Shown here: one piece after another, positions 23,100 to 29,560 of the stretch
How the letters are laid out: every line of letters begins with the position of its first letter
How positions within the stretch are numbered: position 1 is the stretch's first letter
IMG/VR virus record: IMGVR_UViG_3300031787_000001
Coordinates: 62,001 to 126,000 of that record
Length of the DNA stretch: 64,000 nt
Reading direction: 5' to 3' (one strand)
Notes under the pieces: generated by a model
Seen by the model: the letters and a program-made list of their open reading frames with translations, nothing else
The model's database searches: none
Told to the model about the DNA's origin: nothing
Made by a program: the position numbers and the translations under genes

Positions 23100-23345
23100 A
23101 TGAAATGTATCAAATCAATTAAGTCAACTAAAAACACCGAAATCGGGGTAATTAAAAGAATTGACGACAAAGAAGCAGAATCAATGGTTAAATCAGGTTA
23201 TTGGAAATATGTTCCTAAATCTGAATTTAAAATTAAAAAAGTAAAAGAAGATGAAACATTAAGGGAACAATATCCCGCCAATGTTGAAGGATCAAAAGAA
23301 TTTAACAAGGCAAATAAAAAAAATAATAAAAAAGTTTCGAAATAA
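23100..23345 (+). CDS. hypothetical basic protein
   Basis: 81 aa ORF. Confidence 0.55.
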   Translation: MKCIKSIKSTKNTEIGVIKRIDDKEAESMVKSGYWKYVPKSEFKIKKVKEDETLREQYPANVEGSKEFNKANKKNNKKVSK

Positions 23346-23394
23346 TTTTTTTATTATTTCAAATTTACATATATTTGCATATATTTATAAGACA

Positions 23395-23487
23395 ATGACA
23401 AACTTGTTTAACATACTAACGATAGAGAATACACCAAATAATGGTGGTGGGTATGATGTGCCAGTATACAAACAAGTTCGGAGTTAA
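23395..23487 (+). CDS. leader peptide 1 (30 aa, MTNLFNILTIENTPNNGGGYDVPVYKQVRS) of tRNA array 1
   Basis: codons 6-25 all read by array-1 tRNAs; preceded by TATATTTG (23370-23377) and TATTTATA (23382-23389); followed by terminator. Confidence 0.8.
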   Translation: MTNLFNILTIENTPNNGGGYDVPVYKQVRS

Positions 23488-23547
23488 AAAAATTTATTAA
23501 AACAAAATAAACATAAACCCGAACACAAAAAGTTCGGGTTTTTTTTG
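23401..23547 (+). promoter_or_regulatory. attenuator 1 (1:2, antiterminator and terminator helices)
   Basis: aacttgttt (23401-09) pairs aaacaagtt (23470-78); gttcggagtt (23476-85) pairs aacccgaac (23516-24); terminator aaacccgaac/gttcgggttt plus U-run. Confidence 0.8.
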
Positions 23548-23568
23548 TTAATAGATCTTTGAAATAAT

Positions 23569-23642
23569 CGGGATGTAGTTCAGTCCGGTAGAATGCTTGG
23601 TTTGGGACCAAGATGTCGTAGGTTCGAATCCTGCCATCCCGA
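23569..23642 (+). tRNA. tRNA-Pro(UGG)
   Basis: cttgg-tttggga-ccaag. Confidence 0.93.
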
Positions 23643-23648
23643 CATAAT

Positions 23649-23720
23649 GTCTTCTTAGCTCAACGGTAGAGCAATTGGCTGTTAACCAATAGGTTTTAGG
23701 TTCGAATCCTAAAGAGGACG
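23649..23720 (+). tRNA. tRNA-Asn(GUU)
   Basis: attgg-ctgttaa-ccaat. Confidence 0.93.
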
Positions 23721-23725
23721 CAATC

Positions 23726-23807
23726 GCCCCGATGGTGGAATTGGTAGTCACGGCAGACTTAGGATCTGTTGCCTTATGGTGTGAGAGTTCGAGTCTCTCT
23801 TGGGGTA
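23726..23807 (+). tRNA. tRNA-Leu(UAG)
   Basis: gcaga-cttagga-tctgt, variable arm. Confidence 0.92.
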
Positions 23808-23816
23808 CATTAAATT

Positions 23817-23889
23817 GGCCGATTAGTTCAGCAGGTTAGAATGCGTGACTTGTAATCATGAGACGACAGTTCGATTCTGTCATTGGCCT
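23817..23889 (+). tRNA. tRNA-Thr(UGU)
   Basis: cgtga-cttgtaa-tcatg. Confidence 0.9.
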
Positions 23890-23894
23890 CATAA

Positions 23895-23968
23895 GCGGAT
23901 TTCGCCTAGTTGGCATGGCACCACACTTCCACTGTGGAATAGGGTCGGTTCGAGACCGTCAATCCGCT
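23895..23968 (+). tRNA. tRNA-Gly(UCC)
   Basis: ccaca-cttccac-tgtgg, U73. Confidence 0.88.
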
Positions 23969-24014
23969 CAGAATTTTTTTTATTCAAATATATTTTGTAT
24001 GTTTGAATTTGTAA

Positions 24015-24097
24015 GGTGTAGTTGAGCAATTGGTTGGCTCGCCGGACTGTAAATCCGGTCCCTTCGGGGCTTGTAGGTTCGAGTCCTACCTACACCA
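24015..24097 (+). tRNA. tRNA-Tyr(GUA)
   Basis: ccgga-ctgtaaa-tccgg, variable arm. Confidence 0.92.
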
Positions 24098-24103
24098 CAA
24101 ATT

Positions 24104-24175
24104 GCCGCTGTCGTCTAACGGTTAGGACGCGTCCCTTTCACGGACAAAATGCGAGTTCGATTCTCGTCGGTGGTA
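24104..24175 (+). tRNA. tRNA-Glu(UUC)
   Basis: gtcc-ctttcac-ggac. Confidence 0.9.
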
Positions 24176-24180
24176 CGATT

Positions 24181-24252
24181 GGTCTCATAGTTAATCGGCT
24201 ATAATATTGCCCTGTCACGGCAAAGTGCCGGGTTCGATTCCCGGTGGGACCG
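24181..24252 (+). tRNA. tRNA-Asp(GUC)
   Basis: ttgcc-ctgtcac-ggcaa. Confidence 0.92.
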
Positions 24253-24301
24253 CAAACTTCAGGAGTAATTAACCTGAAGATGGAAGGTTCGAAACTTTCG
24301 A

Positions 24302-24403
24302 TTGGCTATGGTGTAATGGGCACACTGGTCCCGTGATTGGCTCGGTTATCGTCGAGTTTCAGTCGGGACCGGGGGATTCAGGTTCAATTCCTGATTGGTC
24401 AGC
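24302..24403 (+). ncRNA. tRNA-like RNA with anticodon arm extended into a long hairpin
   Basis: D arm gtgt/acac; stem ggtccc/gggacc enclosing ~32 nt hairpin; T arm tcagg-ttcaatt-cctga. Confidence 0.6.
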
Positions 24404-24408
24404 AAAAT

Positions 24409-24482
24409 GGACCCTTAGCTCAGTAGGTTAGAGCAAATGACTCATAATCATTAGGTGCACGGTTCGAGCCCGTGAGGGTCCA
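24409..24482 (+). tRNA. tRNA(CAU), most likely Ile2 (lysidine, reads AUA)
   Basis: aatga-ctcataa-tcatt; GGACCCU acceptor resembles Ile2; leader 1 uses ATA codons. Confidence 0.8.
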
Positions 24483-24487
24483 CATTT

Positions 24488-24559
24488 AGTCCTTTAGCTT
24501 AGTGGGAAAGCGGTTGTCTTACATGCAACATAGAGTGTGTTCGATTCACACAGGGACTA
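24488..24559 (+). tRNA. tRNA-Val(UAC)
   Basis: gttgt-cttacat-gcaac. Confidence 0.88.
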
Positions 24560-24667
24560 CCCCCGATATGTATGTGTAAGCAAGAAGCATATCATCAGTT
24601 GGGATCTTACAGTCCACGAACTGGGGTCCGGTGGGAACCGGGATGAGAGTACCCGAACCTCTCAAAC

Positions 24668-24739
24668 GCAGATATAGCACAATGGTTAGTGTTCGGCCTT
24701 GCCAAGGCTGAGATGCCAGTTCGAATCTGACTATCTGCT
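24668..24739 (+). tRNA. tRNA-Gly(GCC)
   Basis: cggcc-ttgccaa-ggctg. Confidence 0.9.
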
Positions 24740-24744
24740 CAAAT

Positions 24745-24894
24745 TGTACTGTGGTGAAATTGGCAGACACCCCCACTCGTCTCGTGGGCGTCGACAACGA
24801 AATAGGTAAATGGATAAGGGTTGACCACAAGCTAGCTAGCATATTTGTCCTTTACCGAATCGCGACATAGACGGTTCGAATCCTCTCGGTACAG
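24745..24894 (+). ncRNA. tRNA-like RNA with Leu-type D arm and ~80 nt variable-arm hairpin
   Basis: acceptor tgtactg/cggtaca; D arm ggtgaaattggcagacac; arm cccac-tcgtctc-gtggg lacking U33; T loop ttcgaat. Confidence 0.65.
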
Positions 24895-24923
24895 CATATA
24901 TTTTTGACAAATAAAAATAGTTT

Positions 24924-25163
24924 ATGACGATCTTAATCGGCATCAATGAATTAGAAGAAGAATTTCAAATACCGTGGAAGATGGGATTAGTTAATCATTT
25001 GGTCATTGATTACGCAGACAACGCAATCTATGGTACATTTGAGAAAAAAGAAGTAATTATTTTTAGGTTCAAAAAATATGGTTGGGTTTGTGATAATAGA
25101 TACAATTTATACACACTATCAAGTGGTGAGGCAGGTATCATGATTAACATGAATTCAACATAA
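24924..25163 (+). CDS. hypothetical protein
   Basis: 79 aa ORF between tRNA arrays. Confidence 0.5.
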   Translation: MTILIGINELEEEFQIPWKMGLVNHLVIDYADNAIYGTFEKKEVIIFRFKKYGWVCDNRYNLYTLSSGEAGIMINMNST

Positions 25164-25187
25164 AATATTTATTAATAACAACATGTT

Positions 25188-25649
25188 ATGAGAAAATTTA
25201 AAACATTATTCGGAATTGAGATTGATAATCTTGCTGAATATATTAAAGAATATATTTCAACAAGAGAAAATGTGGAGATATTAGTTGGCGCCGATTCTCA
25301 AAATTATAGTAATAGAAAAACTATATATGGAGTTGTTATTGCCTTATACACAAAAGGTAAAGGTGCACATGTTTTGTGTTCAAGAGATACTGTTCCAATT
25401 GAGAGAAACACATCAACCAGATTACTTACTGAAGTTTGGAAATCAATTGAGACCGCAGAATTTTTAAAAGAAAATGGTTTACCAAAACCATTATGGATTG
25501 ATATTGACTTAAATCCTGATCCGAAATTTAAATCAAATACCGTATTAAGACAAGCGGTTGGTCTTGTTGAAGGTATGGGTTATCAAGTTAGATATAAACA
25601 ATTAGGTGCTATGGTAACATACGCCGCAAATCACTTAGTTAGAAATTAA
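25188..25649 (+). CDS. RNase H-like YkuK (DUF458) family protein
   Basis: LVGADSQ, RLLTEVWKSIE, IDIDLN, YAANHL. Confidence 0.75.
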   Translation: MRKFKTLFGIEIDNLAEYIKEYISTRENVEILVGADSQNYSNRKTIYGVVIALYTKGKGAHVLCSRDTVPIERNTSTRLLTEVWKSIETAEFLKENGLPKPLWIDIDLNPDPKFKSNTVLRQAVGLVEGMGYQVRYKQLGAMVTYAANHLVRN

Positions 25650-25661
25650 ATTATACTTTTC

Positions 25662-25692
25662 TTTGTTTTTACAATATTTATTATTATCTTTG
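25662..25692 (+). promoter_or_regulatory. Bacteroidota-type promoter for leader 2/array 2
   Basis: TTTG 25662-25665, 19 nt, TATCTTTG 25685-25692. Confidence 0.72.
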
Positions 25693-25714
25693 TAAAACAA
25701 AAGATTAAAAAAAT

Positions 25715-25878
25715 AAATTCGATGAAACAGTTCAAACATATTATGTCGTTTATTAGTTGTTCAAAATGGGCAAGTCAGCGTCATATCCGTATGTCCCGAT
25801 CTGTTTGTATGAATTTGTGTTAAAATATTTTAATAAGTAATTCAAAAAAACCTCGGGACAAAATCTCGAGGTTTTTTG
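25715..25878 (+). promoter_or_regulatory. attenuator 2 (antiterminator/terminator)
   Basis: tgtcccga (25792-99) is the exact complement of tcgggaca (25853-60); terminator cctcggga/tctcgagg plus U6; aaacag (25725-30) pairs ctgttt (25801-06) and aaattc (25715-20) pairs gaattt (25811-16). Confidence 0.82.
25722..25823 (+). CDS. leader peptide 2 (33 aa, MKQFKHIMSFISCSKWASQRHIRMSRSVCMNLC) of tRNA array 2
   Basis: codons 1-27 all fall in codon families read by array-2 tRNAs; not in ORF track because <60 aa. Confidence 0.82.
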   Translation: MKQFKHIMSFISCSKWASQRHIRMSRSVCMNLC

Positions 25879-25884
25879 TTTTAT

Positions 25885-25957
25885 GGGCTGTCATGTTCCA
25901 AGGCTGGCGAAGGACCCTTGCAAGGTCTTTGGGAGATTTCGATTATCTCACGGTCCA
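25885..25957 (+). tRNA. tRNA-Ala(UGC), atypical D arm
   Basis: G3.U70 acceptor, ggacc-cttgcaa-ggtct. Confidence 0.85.
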
Positions 25958-25963
25958 CATAAT

Positions 25964-26037
25964 GTTCGGGTAGATCAATTGGTGAGATCATTCGCCTGAT
26001 ACGCGAAAGGTTGTAGGTTCGAGTCCTACTCCGAACA
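25964..26037 (+). tRNA. tRNA-Ile(GAU)
   Basis: ttcgc-ctgatac-gcgaa. Confidence 0.92.
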
Positions 26038-26042
26038 CGAAT

Positions 26043-26115
26043 GGTACACAAGCTAACTTAGTAGAAGCATTGGACTGAAAATCCAAGGGACTTGGAGCGT
26101 AACCAAGGTGTACCA
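26043..26115 (+). tRNA. tRNA-Phe(GAA), non-canonical D and T loops
   Basis: ttgga-ctgaaaa-tccaa; T loop agcgtaa. Confidence 0.8.
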
Positions 26116-26124
26116 CAAACATAT

Positions 26125-26198
26125 TCCCTCGTAACTCAATTGGCTAGAGTACCACACTTTTAATGTGGGAGTTTCGAGTTCGAATCTCGACGGGGGAA
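26125..26198 (+). tRNA. tRNA-Lys(UUU)
   Basis: ccaca-cttttaa-tgtgg. Confidence 0.92.
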
Positions 26199-26202
26199 CA
26201 AT

Positions 26203-26274
26203 GGTCGGATGGCCGAGTGGATTAGGTGGAGGTCTGCAAAACCTCTTACGTCAGTTCGATTCTGACTCCGACCT
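26203..26274 (+). tRNA. tRNA-Cys(GCA)
   Basis: gaggt-ctgcaaa-acctc, U73. Confidence 0.93.
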
Positions 26275-26281
26275 CAAATAC

Positions 26282-26354
26282 ACGGGTGTGGTGAAATTGG
26301 TTATCATTTCGGTCTCCAAAACCGACGTTTCAGATTCGAATTCTGACATCCGTG
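26282..26354 (+). tRNA. tRNA-Trp(CCA)
   Basis: tcggt-ctccaaa-accga. Confidence 0.92.
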
Positions 26355-26358
26355 CAAT

Positions 26359-26431
26359 GGTTCTATGGTGTAATGGATTAGCACACGAAGCTACGGACTT
26401 CGGAGTTTGGGTTCGAGTCCTAATAGAACCA
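26359..26431 (+). tRNA. tRNA-Arg(ACG)
   Basis: cgaag-ctacgga-cttcg. Confidence 0.9.
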
Positions 26432-26436
26432 CATAT

Positions 26437-26508
26437 TGTTCCGTGATGTAATGGTTAGCATACAAGAATTTGACTCTTGTAGTATAGGTTCGAGTCCTAT
26501 CGGAACAT
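26437..26508 (+). tRNA. tRNA-Gln(UUG)
   Basis: caaga-atttgac-tcttg, U1-A72. Confidence 0.88.
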
Positions 26509-26514
26509 CATAAA

Positions 26515-26597
26515 GGAGAGGTCGTATAGTGGTTTAGTACAGTAGTCTTGAAAACTACCGAGTTTAGGCTCCGTGGGTTCGAATCCCACCCTCTCCG
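26515..26597 (+). tRNA. tRNA-Ser(UGA)
   Basis: gtagt-cttgaaa-actac, variable arm, G73. Confidence 0.92.
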
Positions 26598-26602
26598 CAT
26601 AT

Positions 26603-26680
26603 GGTGGCCTGAGATGGGTTGGTTACATCGTCAGATTGTGGCTCTGAAGAACACGGGTTCGACTCCCGTAGGTCACACCA
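26603..26680 (+). tRNA. tRNA-His(GUG)
   Basis: tcaga-ttgtggc-tctga, G-1, CCA encoded. Confidence 0.88.
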
Positions 26681-26683
26681 AAA

Positions 26684-26772
26684 GGAGAGTAAACTACGAC
26701 GGTGAGTAGACATGCCTGCTAAGCATTGTGTTCGTTAATTCGGATGAGGTTCGATCCCTCTACTCTCCGCCA
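26684..26772 (+). tRNA. tRNA-Ser(GCU)
   Basis: loop ctgctaa, variable arm, GCCA end. Confidence 0.85.
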
Positions 26773-26775
26773 AAT

Positions 26776-26848
26776 GCCGTGGGTTAGTGGAATACGACTA
26801 TCTCTCATAAGGATGGAGAACACAGTTCGAACCTGTGCTACGGTACCA
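26776..26848 (+). tRNA. tRNA-Met(CAU), elongator, atypical D arm
   Basis: tatct-ctcataa-ggatg, T arm cacag/ctgtg, CCA. Confidence 0.7.
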
Positions 26849-26868
26849 AAAAAAAGTTTTAAAAAGAT

Positions 26869-27162
26869 TTTGTATTTTAAAAAAGTATTTATATCTTTGT
26901 AAAAGTTCTTTAAACATCGTGGCGTGGAGAAGTGGTATCTCACTAGGCTCATAACCTAGGGACCGTTGGTTCGAATCCAACCGCCGCAACAAAAAAGTTT
27001 TAAAAAGATTTTGTTTTTTGAAAAACTCTTTTTATATTTGTAAAACAATTCGGTAATACACACCGAAAAAGTTCTTAAAAAAAAAGTTTGACAAAAATTT
27101 GGAAAGTTGAAAAACACTTCTTATCTTTGTAAAACAATCGGAAACGATAAAGTTCTTTGAAA
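26869..27162 (+). promoter_or_regulatory. three tandem, mutually similar Bacteroidota-type promoters with boxA-like elements
   Basis: TTTG/TAnnTTTG pairs at 26869/26892, 27010/27033, 27098/27122; GTTCTTTRAA at 26905 and 27152. Confidence 0.75.
26918..26989 (+). tRNA. initiator tRNA-fMet(CAU)
   Basis: C1:A72 mismatch, ctagg-ctcataa-cctag. Confidence 0.88.
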
Positions 27163-27164
27163 AT

Positions 27165-27965
27165 ATTGGGCGGTCTATAGTCCATAAAATAAACCATGAA
27201 AGTGGTATAAAGTGGAATACCTTGGTTTTGGTATTCTGCGGCTTGGGTAACCGAGCTCGAGTAGACAAACGAGATATCGTCTGACCTTTAGTACTGAGGG
27301 TAACACTGTAGGGAAAGTGGTTGGGCGATCAAGCGATGTGGGTCGTTTGGTTGAGGTGGGAACACCAATAAGAATAACTCGTAGAATTATTGCAAGAAAT
27401 GTTGTTATCCGACTTCATAATTGCGTTTTTCAATATTATGGTTGTCTTAAAACCGAAAGGTATGTTAGTGTACAGGTGGTGCTGTTATTAACCTTAACCT
27501 TAGCCTACCAAGGCATGAGTTATGAAGATGAGCAAAAATATGGAGGTGGGGACATCTCAGAGGGTAGTTTAGTATTTAGCCGTTCAAAAGATGGCTGAGC
27601 TGGTGACGAACCACTACCTTCACAATCCACAAACCAATAACTTGCATCCATTTAATTGCAAAATTAATAAATCAAGGAAAAGTGTTCGTCAGTTGTGGAT
27701 GACAGGTCACTACATAGTCATGAGTTGTTCATGGCCATGAAGGGTCCCAAGCCCAACATGATTTTCACCAAAGTTCTCTAATCTCGCAAGGATTAATTGG
27801 GGTGGCAACCTCGAAGAGTGATGAGTAATGAGAGAGTGATTCACAACTTAAGGATTGGTTAATCTAATTGACCGTGACTGATTATTACTACTCAAAAGGT
27901 AGTGGATAAGGGAAGAATCAATAATGTCCCAAAGATAATCACCCGAACGTGTAATCTCAGCGTTT
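27165..27965 (+). ncRNA. ~800 nt structured RNA, probably GOLLD
   Basis: ORF-poor, GC-elevated, many hairpins (e.g. gaatacc/ggtattc, gcttgg/ccgagc, ttagccgtt/gatggctga, ctact/agtag); size and tRNA-cluster/phage context fit GOLLD; family assignment not verified. Confidence 0.6.
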
Positions 27966-29086: not shown

Positions 29087-29167
29087 TAAAAAAAATAAAA
29101 GATAAATTGGGTTAAATTTTTATTTAACCCTTTTTTTGTCTATATTTGTGAAAGTTCTTTAAAATAT

Positions 29168-29560
29168 GGGGGTGTCCAGGTATTGATTGGCGTTTATATG
29201 GTAAATGGGCACGTAGTCAGATGTCATCTATGACTTAAATCTACGGTGGTAAAAATCAAACGGCAACGTTTACAACAACATGGAAATTGCAGGTATCCTT
29301 GCAACTTCTAAAGTAGCTGCTTAATAAGTACCTACTGTCGGGTCGGTTAGGACATATAACCCAGGAACAGAAGTCCGTTATACGGGTCACAGGTCAGAGC
29401 TCGTTTAAAATAATTCTGAGACCAAGTTGTTTGTAGGTAGGTTTCTCACATATATCAAACCTAATATTTTGGAACATTGAGAACCAATGTTATACTAAAC
29501 GTGTAGTCCATCTATTGTATGGCGAACAAGACAAGGGTTCGATTCCCTTCACCTCCACCA
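29168..29560 (+). ncRNA. ssrA: tmRNA
   Basis: GGGGGUG/CACCUCC-ACCA acceptor with G3.U70, T arm aaggg-ttcgatt-ccctt; internal tag frame 29262-29324 GNVYNNMEIAGILATSKVAA*; promoter 29141, boxA 29154, terminator 29567-29593. Confidence 0.93.

What the first reader, a model, noticed from the sequence alone, without database searches (positions are those of the whole stretch)
23370..26848. Paired 'tRNA-inventory' attenuators: each tRNA array is preceded by a leader peptide written in the codons of its own tRNAs
Seen: two arrays with non-overlapping decoding sets. Array 1 has Pro, Asn, Leu-UAG, Thr, Gly-UCC, Tyr, Glu, Asp, Ile2/CAU, Val, Gly-GCC. Array 2 has Ala, Ile-GAU, Phe, Lys, Cys, Trp, Arg-ACG, Gln, Ser-UGA, His, Ser-GCU, Met. 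Each follows the layout promoter, ~30-codon ORF, terminator with a competing antiterminator. Leader 1 has 20 consecutive codons from set 1; leader 2 has 27 consecutive codons from set 2; every tRNA in each array is represented. The match reaches isoacceptor level: Ile is ATA in leader 1 and ATT/ATC in leader 2. If each codon were ~50% likely to fall in the right set, such runs would be roughly 1e-6 and 1e-8 (back-of-envelope). Established: classical attenuators (trpL, hisL, thrL) sense one to three aminoacyl-tRNAs and control biosynthesis genes. Inference: this is a multi-input OR-gate in which stalling at any depleted, uncharged or cleaved tRNA permits read-through into the array supplying it, possibly countering host anticodon-nuclease defences or starvation. 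I know of no description of this for phage tRNA arrays.
Basis: partly seen in the sequence, partly recalled or inferred. Interest (0 to 1): 0.97.

Follow-up and report, generated by a model that had tools for sequence, protein, structure and literature searches.

The report
Codon-inventory attenuators before phage tRNA arrays
In this freshwater jumbo phage and many relatives, each cluster of tRNA genes is preceded by a tiny gene written in the codons that those tRNAs read, followed by a switchable stop signal, which looks like a sensor that turns the cluster on when any of its tRNAs runs short.

Summary
Leader 1 (23395-23487) has 20 consecutive codons read by array 1. Leader 2 (25722-25823) has 27 read by array 2. 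The two codon sets do not overlap, and every tRNA of each array is represented (chance about 1e-5 and 4e-11).

- A tRNA in the array has a cognate codon in the leader in 555 of 563 cases.
- Isoacceptor choice follows the anticodons (AGR/CGH, ATA/ATY, AGY/TCN).
- In phylogenetically independent pairs the leader changes with the array about 21 times and never against it.
- Matching is 92% in frame, against 51% and 34% in the other frames. It falls to chance in the last 7-10 codons.
- Those last codons hold a segment complementary to the terminator's 5' arm, and that segment co-varies with at least seven different terminator stems.

Other phages show the same pattern: a Q/P/H leader before Pro-Pro-His-Gln, a Y/E leader before Tyr/Glu tRNAs, and 20-amino-acid leaders before full arrays.

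Best reading: a ribosome-mediated transcription attenuator, a known mechanism with a new input and output. Translation, termination and polarity are not shown. I found no prior description.

The parts
23370..23377 (+). Promoter -7 box (TAnnTTTG, Bacteroidota type) of unit 1
   Evidence: the motif ends 17 nt before the ATG. The same motif lies 17-30 nt before the ATG in 27 of 40 distinct leaders (52 nt in 2 more), against a background of 0.084 per 80 nt.
23395..23487 (+). Leader ORF 1, 30 codons plus TAA
   Evidence: Homologous ORFs occur in relatives.
23410..23469 (+). Sensing block of leader 1: 20 consecutive codons, all read by array-1 tRNAs, all 11 species represented
   Evidence: P 1.3e-5.
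23476..23481 (+). Antiterminator arm 1 (GTTCGG, codons 28-29), complementary to the terminator's 5' arm
23518..23546 (+). Intrinsic terminator 1: CCCGAAC / GTTCGGG stem plus a run of 8 T
23569..24740 (+). tRNA array 1: Pro-UGG, Asn, Leu-UAG, Thr-UGU, Gly-UCC, Tyr, Glu, Asp, CAU (Ile2-like), Val-UAC, Gly-GCC
   Evidence: The CAU class is addressed.
25685..25692 (+). Promoter -7 box of unit 2
   Evidence: 29 nt before the ATG.
25722..25823 (+). Leader ORF 2, 33 codons plus TAA. Codons 1-27 are all read by array-2 tRNAs and all 12 species are represented.
   Evidence: P 4.4e-11.
25793..25799 (+). Antiterminator arm 2 (GTCCCGA, codons 24-26), complementary to the terminator's 5' arm TCGGGAC at 25853-25859
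25845..25877 (+). Intrinsic terminator 2
   Evidence: 14 pairs, then a T run.
25885..26848 (+). tRNA array 2: Ala-UGC, Ile-GAU, Phe, Lys, Cys, Trp, Arg-ACG, Gln, Ser-UGA, His, Ser-GCU, Met-CAU
26892..26990 (+). Separate promoter box plus an initiator-like CAU tRNA (C1xA72); probably not under leader 2

Best explanation
Each unit is a ribosome-mediated (leader-peptide) transcription attenuator whose output is a tRNA array. Its regulatory codons are the codons read by the tRNAs of that array.

Proposed mechanism (inferred, not shown):
1. A promoter starts a transcript with a very short 5' UTR.
2. A ribosome translates a 30-50-codon ORF with three parts: a short constant N-terminal block, a sensing block holding at least one codon for every tRNA species encoded downstream, and a 7-10-codon tail that forms the 5' strand of an antiterminator hairpin.
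3. If the ribosome crosses the sensing block quickly, it enters and melts the antiterminator. The terminator 24-32 nt past the stop codon then forms, and the array is not transcribed.
4. If the ribosome waits at any sensing codon because the matching charged tRNA (host or phage) is scarce, or if no ribosome is there at all, the antiterminator stays folded and RNA polymerase reads into the array.

The net effect would be negative feedback on tRNA supply, with as many inputs as the array has tRNA species.

Shown here: the anatomy, its conservation, the codon-to-array tracking, and the co-variation of the antiterminator with the terminator. Inferred: translation, the polarity of the switch, and its physiological trigger.
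For: Window:
- Runs of 20 and 27 own-set codons, non-overlapping sets, every tRNA represented, P 1.3e-5 and 4.4e-11.
- Terminators and competing pairings.

Family (80 loci):
- A tRNA in the array has a cognate codon in the leader in 555 of 563 cases. A tRNA absent from the array has its codon in the leader in 145 of 472 cases.
- In genomes with two leaders, 345 of 408 sensing codons fit the leader's own array and 51 fit the other array.
- The core is 92% own-set in frame, against 51% and 34% in the other two frames and 21% against arrays of the other family.
- Isoacceptors: arrays with only Arg-UCU have 18 AGR and 0 CGH; arrays with only Arg-ACG have 0 and 10. With Ile-GAU present there are 42 ATY and 8 ATA; without it, 3 and 34. 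Arrays with only Ser-UGA have 1 AGY and 17 TCN. In four-codon boxes read by U34 tRNAs, NNR is 75% against 53% in phage genes (p 1.6e-12).
- Tree-based independent pairs: same direction 20.7, opposite 0.0.
- The own-codon fraction is 93-100% at codons -11 to -25 from the stop and at about chance in the last 7-10 codons. That is where the arm complementary to the terminator's 5' arm lies.
- The ORF tail pairs with its own terminator at -10.8 kcal/mol, against -5.1 for other families' terminators. Own is better in 40 of 41.
- Antiterminator arm and terminator 5' arm change together: GTTCGG/CCGAAC, GTCCCGA/TCGGGAC, GTTAGAGG/CCTCTAAC, CCAGGGC/GCCCTGG, GGAGATGG/CCATCTCC against GGAGAAGG/CCTTCTCC, and GTCAGAC/GTCTGAC.
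- RNAalifold returns this helix as the consensus.

Other compositions:
- L111: a sensing block of Q, P and H only, before Pro, Pro, His, Gln.
- LR745206.1: a Y/E-rich leader before Tyr/Glu tRNAs and an I/G/A-rich leader before Ile-UAU, Gly, Ala.
- L095: R, Q, L, V, F before Phe, Val, Leu, Arg, Gln.
- L054/L055: N, I, S, Q, F, P, H, V.
- L071: no Thr or Gly codons before the ORF's last six, and Thr and Gly-UCC tRNAs lie upstream of the leader.
- All 9 distinct single-leader peptides contain all 20 amino acids in 31-53 residues.
Against: - There is no direct evidence of translation, of 3' ends at the terminators, or of regulated read-through. Metatranscriptome contigs cover the arrays at depth 15 or less and leader 2 not at all.
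- The rule is one-sided. Foreign codons are tolerated: 145 of 472 cases, and within-family array swaps fit better in 70 of 472.
- In L037-L041 the leader keeps a broad codon set although only four tRNAs remain behind it.
- In leader 2 the antiterminator arm lies 22-30 nt before the stop, so a ribosome parked at the stop would not cover it. The model then needs the ribosome to act while passing, or by steric hindrance.
- A TAnnTTTG box at 23998 and a T8 run after Gly-UCC suggest that the distal half of array 1 may also have its own promoter.
- tRNA species that move together in one rearrangement are not fully independent events.
- No host or cultured relative is known.
Confidence: 0.8

Rival explanations
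1. Chance or general codon bias. The phage simply prefers codons served by its own tRNAs, and the short ORFs are fortuitous.
For: Phage tRNA sets usually match phage codon usage. Set 1 alone covers 52% of codons in the phage's genes.
Against: - The two leaders in one genome use disjoint sets.
- No real-gene window comes near the observed runs.
- The other two reading frames give 51% and 34%.
- Codon content follows array membership across rearrangements.
Confidence: 0.01
2. The ORFs encode functional micropeptides, for example regulators or toxins, and the composition match is a side effect.
For: The ORFs are conserved. An N-terminal MKN(L/I)NNI block and, in some families, a C-terminal DTDVG are conserved at peptide level.
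Against: - The middle of the peptide is not conserved in sequence, only in which tRNAs it calls for.
- Synonymous codon choice follows the anticodons, which peptide-level selection does not predict.
- There is no Pfam match.
- The ORF tail is constrained as RNA: it co-varies with the terminator.
Confidence: 0.03
3. The switch is translation-coupled but has another polarity or read-out. Efficient leader translation might promote array expression (positive feedback), or stalling might trigger processing or decay of the precursor rather than antitermination.
For: The polarity has not been measured. In leader 2 the geometry of a ribosome at the stop codon relative to the antiterminator arm is not the textbook one.
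Against: - The ORF always stops 24-32 nt before the terminator stem, so a ribosome cannot mask the terminator itself.
- The only conserved alternative pairing uses the ORF tail as the competitor of the terminator. A translating ribosome must therefore destroy the antiterminator, not the terminator.
- No upstream segment sequesters the antiterminator arm in the folds.
Confidence: 0.1
4. It is a general sensor of translation capacity (ribosome or elongation-factor availability). The codon match only ensures that the leader is never limited by tRNAs the array cannot supply.
For: With 20-amino-acid leaders before full arrays, the sensor reads overall decoding capacity in practice.
Against: Narrow leaders (Q/P/H, Y/E, I/G/A) repeat the few cognate codons several times, as in classical amino-acid attenuators. 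That points to tRNA-specific sensing. The two readings are not exclusive.
Confidence: 0.06

Closest known systems
Leader-peptide transcription attenuators of amino-acid biosynthesis operons (trpL, hisL, pheL, thrL, leuL; ilvGMEDA leader with Leu/Val/Ile codons). From established knowledge.
   Same: A promoter, a short ORF carrying regulatory codons, an intrinsic terminator before the first structural gene, and an alternative helix that uses the terminator's 5' arm. The signal is ribosome speed at the regulatory codons.
   Different: - The output is tRNA genes, not enzymes.
- Regulatory codons are one or a few for each of 2 to about 23 tRNA species, instead of tandem runs for 1-3 amino acids.
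- Specificity is at isoacceptor level.
- The layout has two helices with no 1:2 anti-antiterminator, so absence of translation should give read-through, not super-attenuation.
- It is phage-encoded and modular.
- Rfam His, Thr and Leu leader models give only sub-threshold hits at the terminators.
The pheM leader attenuator of pheST (Phe-tRNA synthetase) in E. coli. From established knowledge.
   Same: Leader-peptide attenuation that controls a component of the decoding machinery according to how well its cognate codons are read.
   Different: It has a single amino acid as input and a protein-coding output, and it is bacterial.
T-box riboswitches
   Same: They sense tRNA charging status and act by antitermination upstream of genes that restore aminoacyl-tRNA supply.
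   Different: T-boxes bind uncharged tRNA directly through a specifier codon and the T-box sequence, with no ORF. No T-box match was found in the window.
Phage tRNA arrays as compensation for host tRNA loss or anticodon nucleases (T5 and vibriophage work). From memory, not re-read here.
   Same: The same cargo, and the same presumed benefit of keeping decoding going during infection.
   Different: To my knowledge those studies describe content and anticodon-loop escape, not a cis-acting sensor. Seven literature searches found no leader-peptide control of tRNA arrays.
Growth-rate and stringent (ppGpp) control of bacterial rRNA and tRNA promoters. From established knowledge.
   Same: Feedback from translational demand to synthesis of stable RNA.
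   Different: It acts at initiation through a global alarmone, not per tRNA set through a cis leader.

Membership tests
Ribosome-mediated (leader-peptide) transcription attenuator | A short ORF in the 5' leader, between the promoter and the first regulated gene | tested here: met
   ORFs of 23-53 codons lie 17-30 nt after a TAnnTTTG box and 24-32 nt before a terminator. There are 41 distinct versions.
Ribosome-mediated (leader-peptide) transcription attenuator | Regulatory codons in the ORF that correspond to the product of the regulated genes | tested here: met
   555 of 563 tRNA-to-codon cases, isoacceptor tracking, and out-of-frame controls. The product is the tRNA itself rather than an amino acid.
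Ribosome-mediated (leader-peptide) transcription attenuator | An intrinsic terminator between the ORF and the regulated genes | tested here: met
   a GC-rich hairpin of -6 to -18 kcal/mol followed by a T run in every case kept.
Ribosome-mediated (leader-peptide) transcription attenuator | A mutually exclusive antiterminator placed so that a translating ribosome controls it | tested here: met
   The ORF tail is complementary to the terminator's 5' arm and co-varies with at least 7 stem sequences. The codon match ends where the antiterminator arm begins.
Ribosome-mediated (leader-peptide) transcription attenuator | The ORF is translated, and read-through rises when cognate charged tRNA is limiting | not testable with these tools
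   Only assembled metatranscriptome contigs were available, and coverage of the leaders was too thin.
Ribosome-mediated (leader-peptide) transcription attenuator | An anti-antiterminator (1:2 pairing), as in trp and his | tested here: not met
   No upstream segment pairs with the antiterminator arm in full-length or truncated folds. This is a feature of the trp/his subtype, not of the class.
T-box riboswitch | Stem I specifier loop and the conserved T-box sequence (Rfam RF00230) | tested here: not met
   No hit at the gathering threshold or at E-value up to 1 in 23300-27200.

The most novel reading that the evidence does not exclude
A modular, easily re-programmed 'tRNA homeostat' is widespread in large phages. 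It consists of a constant start block, a sensing block that evolution rewrites whenever tRNA genes enter or leave the array, and a tail forming an antiterminator matched to the terminator. It would let the phage measure, codon by codon, whether the infected cell can still decode. It would switch on exactly the array that supplies what is missing, including after host tRNA degradation or attack by anticodon nucleases. It would be the first case of tRNA genes controlled by leader-peptide attenuation, and of an attenuator with up to 20 amino-acid inputs.
Probability: 0.4. Interest if true: 0.95.

Novelty: new variant of a known kind. Interest (0 to 1): 0.9.

Why it matters
- Known attenuators sense one to three amino acids and control biosynthetic enzymes or a synthetase. 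Here the same principle appears to control the tRNA genes themselves, with one input per tRNA species and isoacceptor resolution.
- It would explain how large phages regulate their tRNA arrays, which is an open question.
- It gives a sequence-only read-out of which tRNAs form one regulatory unit.
- It is a natural, compact, re-programmable multi-input sensor of decoding capacity that synthetic biology could use.
- The evolutionary record is unusually clear: leaders are rewritten when arrays are shuffled, so regulatory co-evolution can be studied directly.
- If the trigger is host tRNA cleavage, this would be a new layer in the conflict between phage and host defence.

Tried and rejected
- DNA and protein searches of GenBank phages for a cultured close relative: none found. 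The best protein hits are uncultured huge phages at 33% identity.
- Loci around the RNase H-like homologue in LR756501 and LR756508: no leader/array units.
- tRNA arrays of crAss-like IAS virus, Erwinia phage Caitlin and Bacillus phage MarvelLand: no ORF-plus-terminator leader before the arrays. The device is therefore not universal.
- Metatranscriptomes: only assembled contigs could be laid. GOLLD is covered hugely, the arrays at depth 15 or less, and leader 2 not at all. One 152-nt contig over leader 1 starts upstream of the promoter box and may be DNA. This says nothing either way about termination.
- One MAFFT alignment of all 41 leader tails put the antiterminator arms out of register across families, so I did not use the count of structure pairs on it. 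I used duplex energies and per-family RNAalifold instead.
- Pfam on the leader peptides: nothing.
- The overlapping alternative-frame ORFs (for example 23441-23500) were considered as second leaders. I rejected them because their codons fit the arrays no better than chance.

Full report
**1. What is in the window**

The stretch holds two transcription-unit-like modules on the + strand.

Module 1:
- a TAnnTTTG box at 23370-23377;
- a 30-codon ORF at 23395-23487;
- a terminator (stem 23518-23538, T run to 23546);
- eleven tRNA genes at 23569-24740.

Module 2:
- a TAnnTTTG box at 25685-25692;
- a 33-codon ORF at 25722-25823;
- a terminator at 25845-25877;
- twelve tRNA genes at 25885-26848.

All three appear at slightly relaxed thresholds, and Ala-UGC is called at default thresholds at the same position in relatives.

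The window is identical to part of a 287-kb IMG/VR contig from fresh water. Many lake metagenomes hold it.

**2.

- The decoding sets of the two arrays share no codon.
- Leader 1 has 20 consecutive set-1 codons, with all 11 tRNA species represented.
- Leader 2 has 27 consecutive set-2 codons, with all 12 species represented.
- With the phage's own codon usage the probabilities are 1.3e-5 and 4.4e-11.
- No window of the same length in 42 long ORFs of the window comes close (maxima 14 and 9).

**3.

The RNase H-like gene between the arrays (25188-25646, PF04308) retrieved 80 related loci at 52-100% identity. In these the tRNA genes are heavily reshuffled.

A mechanical search for short ORF plus hairpin/T-run plus tRNA found homologous leaders in nearly all loci that contain an array start. 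I grouped them only by peptide motif and position, not by codon match. Each tRNA was assigned to the nearest upstream leader.

Results:
- A tRNA species in the array has a cognate codon in the leader (last six codons excluded) in 555 of 563 cases. When the species is not in the array, its codon is present in 145 of 472 cases.
- In the eight genomes with two leaders, 345 of 408 sensing codons fit the leader's own array and 51 fit the other array.
- The core of the leaders is 92% own-set in frame, 51% and 34% in the other two frames, and 21% against arrays of the other family.
- Synonymous choice follows the anticodons:
  - arrays with only Arg-UCU: 18 AGR, 0 CGT/CGC/CGA; arrays with only Arg-ACG: 0 and 10;
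  - Ile-GAU present: 42 ATY, 8 ATA; absent: 3 and 34;
  - arrays with only Ser-UGA: 1 AGY, 17 TCN;
  - codons read by U34 tRNAs end in A or G in 75% of cases, against 53% in phage genes.
- On a tree of the RNase H-like protein, independent pairs that differ in array membership differ in leader codon content in the same direction 20.7 times, in the opposite direction 0.0 times, and not at all 31.3 times.

**4. Different arrays, different leaders**

- More distant relatives have one leader before one large array. All nine distinct versions of that leader contain all 20 amino acids within 31-53 residues. The background frequency of this is 4e-5 to 0.03 each.
- In L071, Thr and Gly-UCC tRNAs lie upstream of the leader. 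Thr and Gly codons are absent from the first 25 codons of the ORF and appear only in the last six.
- L054/L055 carry only Ser, Gln, Pro, Phe, Asn, Val, Ile and His tRNAs behind a leader built from those residues.
- L095 has R, Q, L, V, F before Phe, Val, Leu, Arg-ACG and Gln tRNAs.
- In the published but unannotated 634,780-bp phage genome LR745206.1:
  - a leader rich in TAY and GAR codons precedes a Tyr/Glu mini-array that includes Glu-CUC;
  - a leader rich in ATA, GGR and GCR precedes Ile-UAU, Gly-UCC, CAU, Gly-UCC, Ala.
- In L111 the block after the constant start is QQQPQQHPQ, and the tRNAs behind it are Pro, Pro, His, Gln.
- Many of these leaders share the start MKN(L/I)NNI. This behaves as a constant, non-sensing block. 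It explains why the run in leader 1 of the window begins at codon 6.

**5. The switch**

The distance from the stop codon to the terminator stem is 24-32 nt in all 41 versions. When the RNA is cut before the terminator's 3' arm, the 5' arm pairs with a segment of the ORF tail. That segment usually ends 13-23 nt before the end of the stop codon. In the window it ends 5 nt before for leader 1 and 23 nt before for leader 2.

Evidence that this pairing is selected:
- ORF tails pair with their own terminator arm at -10.8 kcal/mol on average, against -5.1 for arms of other families. Own is better in 40 of 41.
- Stem sequences differ completely between families, and the antiterminator arm changes with them. 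This includes the compensatory pair GGAGATGG/CCATCTCC against GGAGAAGG/CCTTCTCC.
- RNAalifold gives this helix as the consensus of the truncated leaders.
- The own-codon fraction is 93-100% from codon -25 to -11 and falls to about chance in the last 7-10 codons, the part that forms the antiterminator.

**6. Most likely mechanism**

The anatomy is that of a two-helix leader-peptide attenuator.
- A ribosome that runs through the sensing block melts the antiterminator, and the terminator forms.
- A ribosome that waits at any sensing codon, or no ribosome at all, leaves the antiterminator in place, and the array is transcribed.

This is inference from structure. Nothing here shows translation or termination. 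The opposite polarity is unlikely, because the ORF never reaches the terminator and the only conserved competitor of the terminator lies inside the ORF.

**7. Weak points**

- The rule is asymmetric: every tRNA is represented, but foreign codons are tolerated.
- L037-L041 keep a broad leader before a reduced array.
- Array 1 has an internal promoter-like box at 23998.
- The geometry of leader 2 needs the ribosome to act in passing rather than while parked at the stop codon.
- Metatranscriptome contigs are uninformative for the leaders.
- Three unrelated phages with tRNA arrays lack the device.
- The wider examples were found with the N-terminal motif as seed, so how widespread the device is remains unknown.

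**8. Comparison with known systems**

It works like the trp, his and ilv attenuators, and like the pheM-pheST attenuator. It meets the structural criteria of that class, except for the trp-type anti-antiterminator. It is not a T-box.

What is new:
- the regulated product is the tRNAs themselves;
- the number of inputs ranges from 2 tRNA species to about 23;
- specificity is at isoacceptor level;
- the setting is a phage;
- the sensing block is visibly rewritten when arrays change.

Seven full-text searches found no description of leader-peptide control of tRNA genes or arrays. The library does not cover all journals, so earlier work cannot be excluded.

**9. Verdict**

The mechanism class is known, and the variant appears to be new. 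Interest is high. Experimental proof of translation-dependent read-through is the missing piece.

Noticed in passing
27185-27963: GOLLD RNA. The Rfam hit is 27560-27963 at 338 bits. Lake metatranscriptome contigs cover about 27185-27960 at word depth 340-6900, against 15 or less over the tRNA arrays. The transcript therefore seems about twice as long as the Rfam model and is very abundant. Promoter boxes lie at 27033 and 27122.
   Followed up: partly
29168-29560: A phage-encoded tmRNA (Rfam, 86.8 bits), with a promoter box at 29141.
   Followed up: no
24741-24897: A conserved tRNA-like non-coding RNA at the end of array 1. It has an acceptor-like stem, a GGTTCGAATCC T-arm, a 7-nt loop (T/C)(C/T)GTCTC on a 5-bp stem, and an extra arm of about 75 nt. 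It is found in 34 related loci and has 14 pairs with compensatory changes. It is not recognised as a tRNA and matches no Rfam family.
   Followed up: partly
24254-24408 and 24563-24667: Two further non-tRNA inserts inside array 1. They are conserved mainly in the closest relative (L005), with the first half of insert 1 also in L071, L042, L049 and L063. Function unknown.
   Followed up: partly
26849-27135: Three copies of a promoter-like module (A-rich stretch, GATTTTGT, then TAT(A/C)TTTGTAAAA). They precede the initiator-like CAU tRNA (26918-26990, C1xA72) and the GOLLD RNA.
   Followed up: no
23976-24005: A T8 run directly after tRNA-Gly-UCC and a TAnnTTTG box at 23998, inside array 1. These may be an internal terminator and promoter that split the array.
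   Followed up: no
25188-25646: An RNase H-like (PF04308/DUF458) gene sits next to or between the tRNA arrays throughout the phage family. It may be a processing nuclease for the tRNA precursors.
   Followed up: partly
L010 682-783, L014 771-873, L046 581-683, L072 4132-4239, L075 3145-3249: Leaders of families B, C and D, which have different terminator stems, share the ending GATACTGATGTnGGnTAA (peptide DTDVG, then stop). Unexplained. It could be a conserved part of the antiterminator hairpin or a termination-pause peptide.
   Followed up: no
L009 3968-4084; L037 4729-4932 (minus strand): HNH-type endonuclease ORFs are inserted between tRNA genes in relatives. This probably drives the shuffling of the arrays.
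   Followed up: no
L023 11029, L044 8063, L049 8048, L054 9910, L063 7605; L081 25503 and 25581: tRNAs with a CUA anticodon (amber suppressors, labelled Pyl by ARAGORN) occur in several relatives and in LR756501. This hints at TAG recoding in part of this phage group.
   Followed up: no
L194 3005-3074, L206 12425-12494: Leaders found with the N-terminal seed in other contigs are preceded by TTGACA-type -35 boxes rather than TAnnTTTG. The device may therefore not be confined to phages of Bacteroidota.
   Followed up: no
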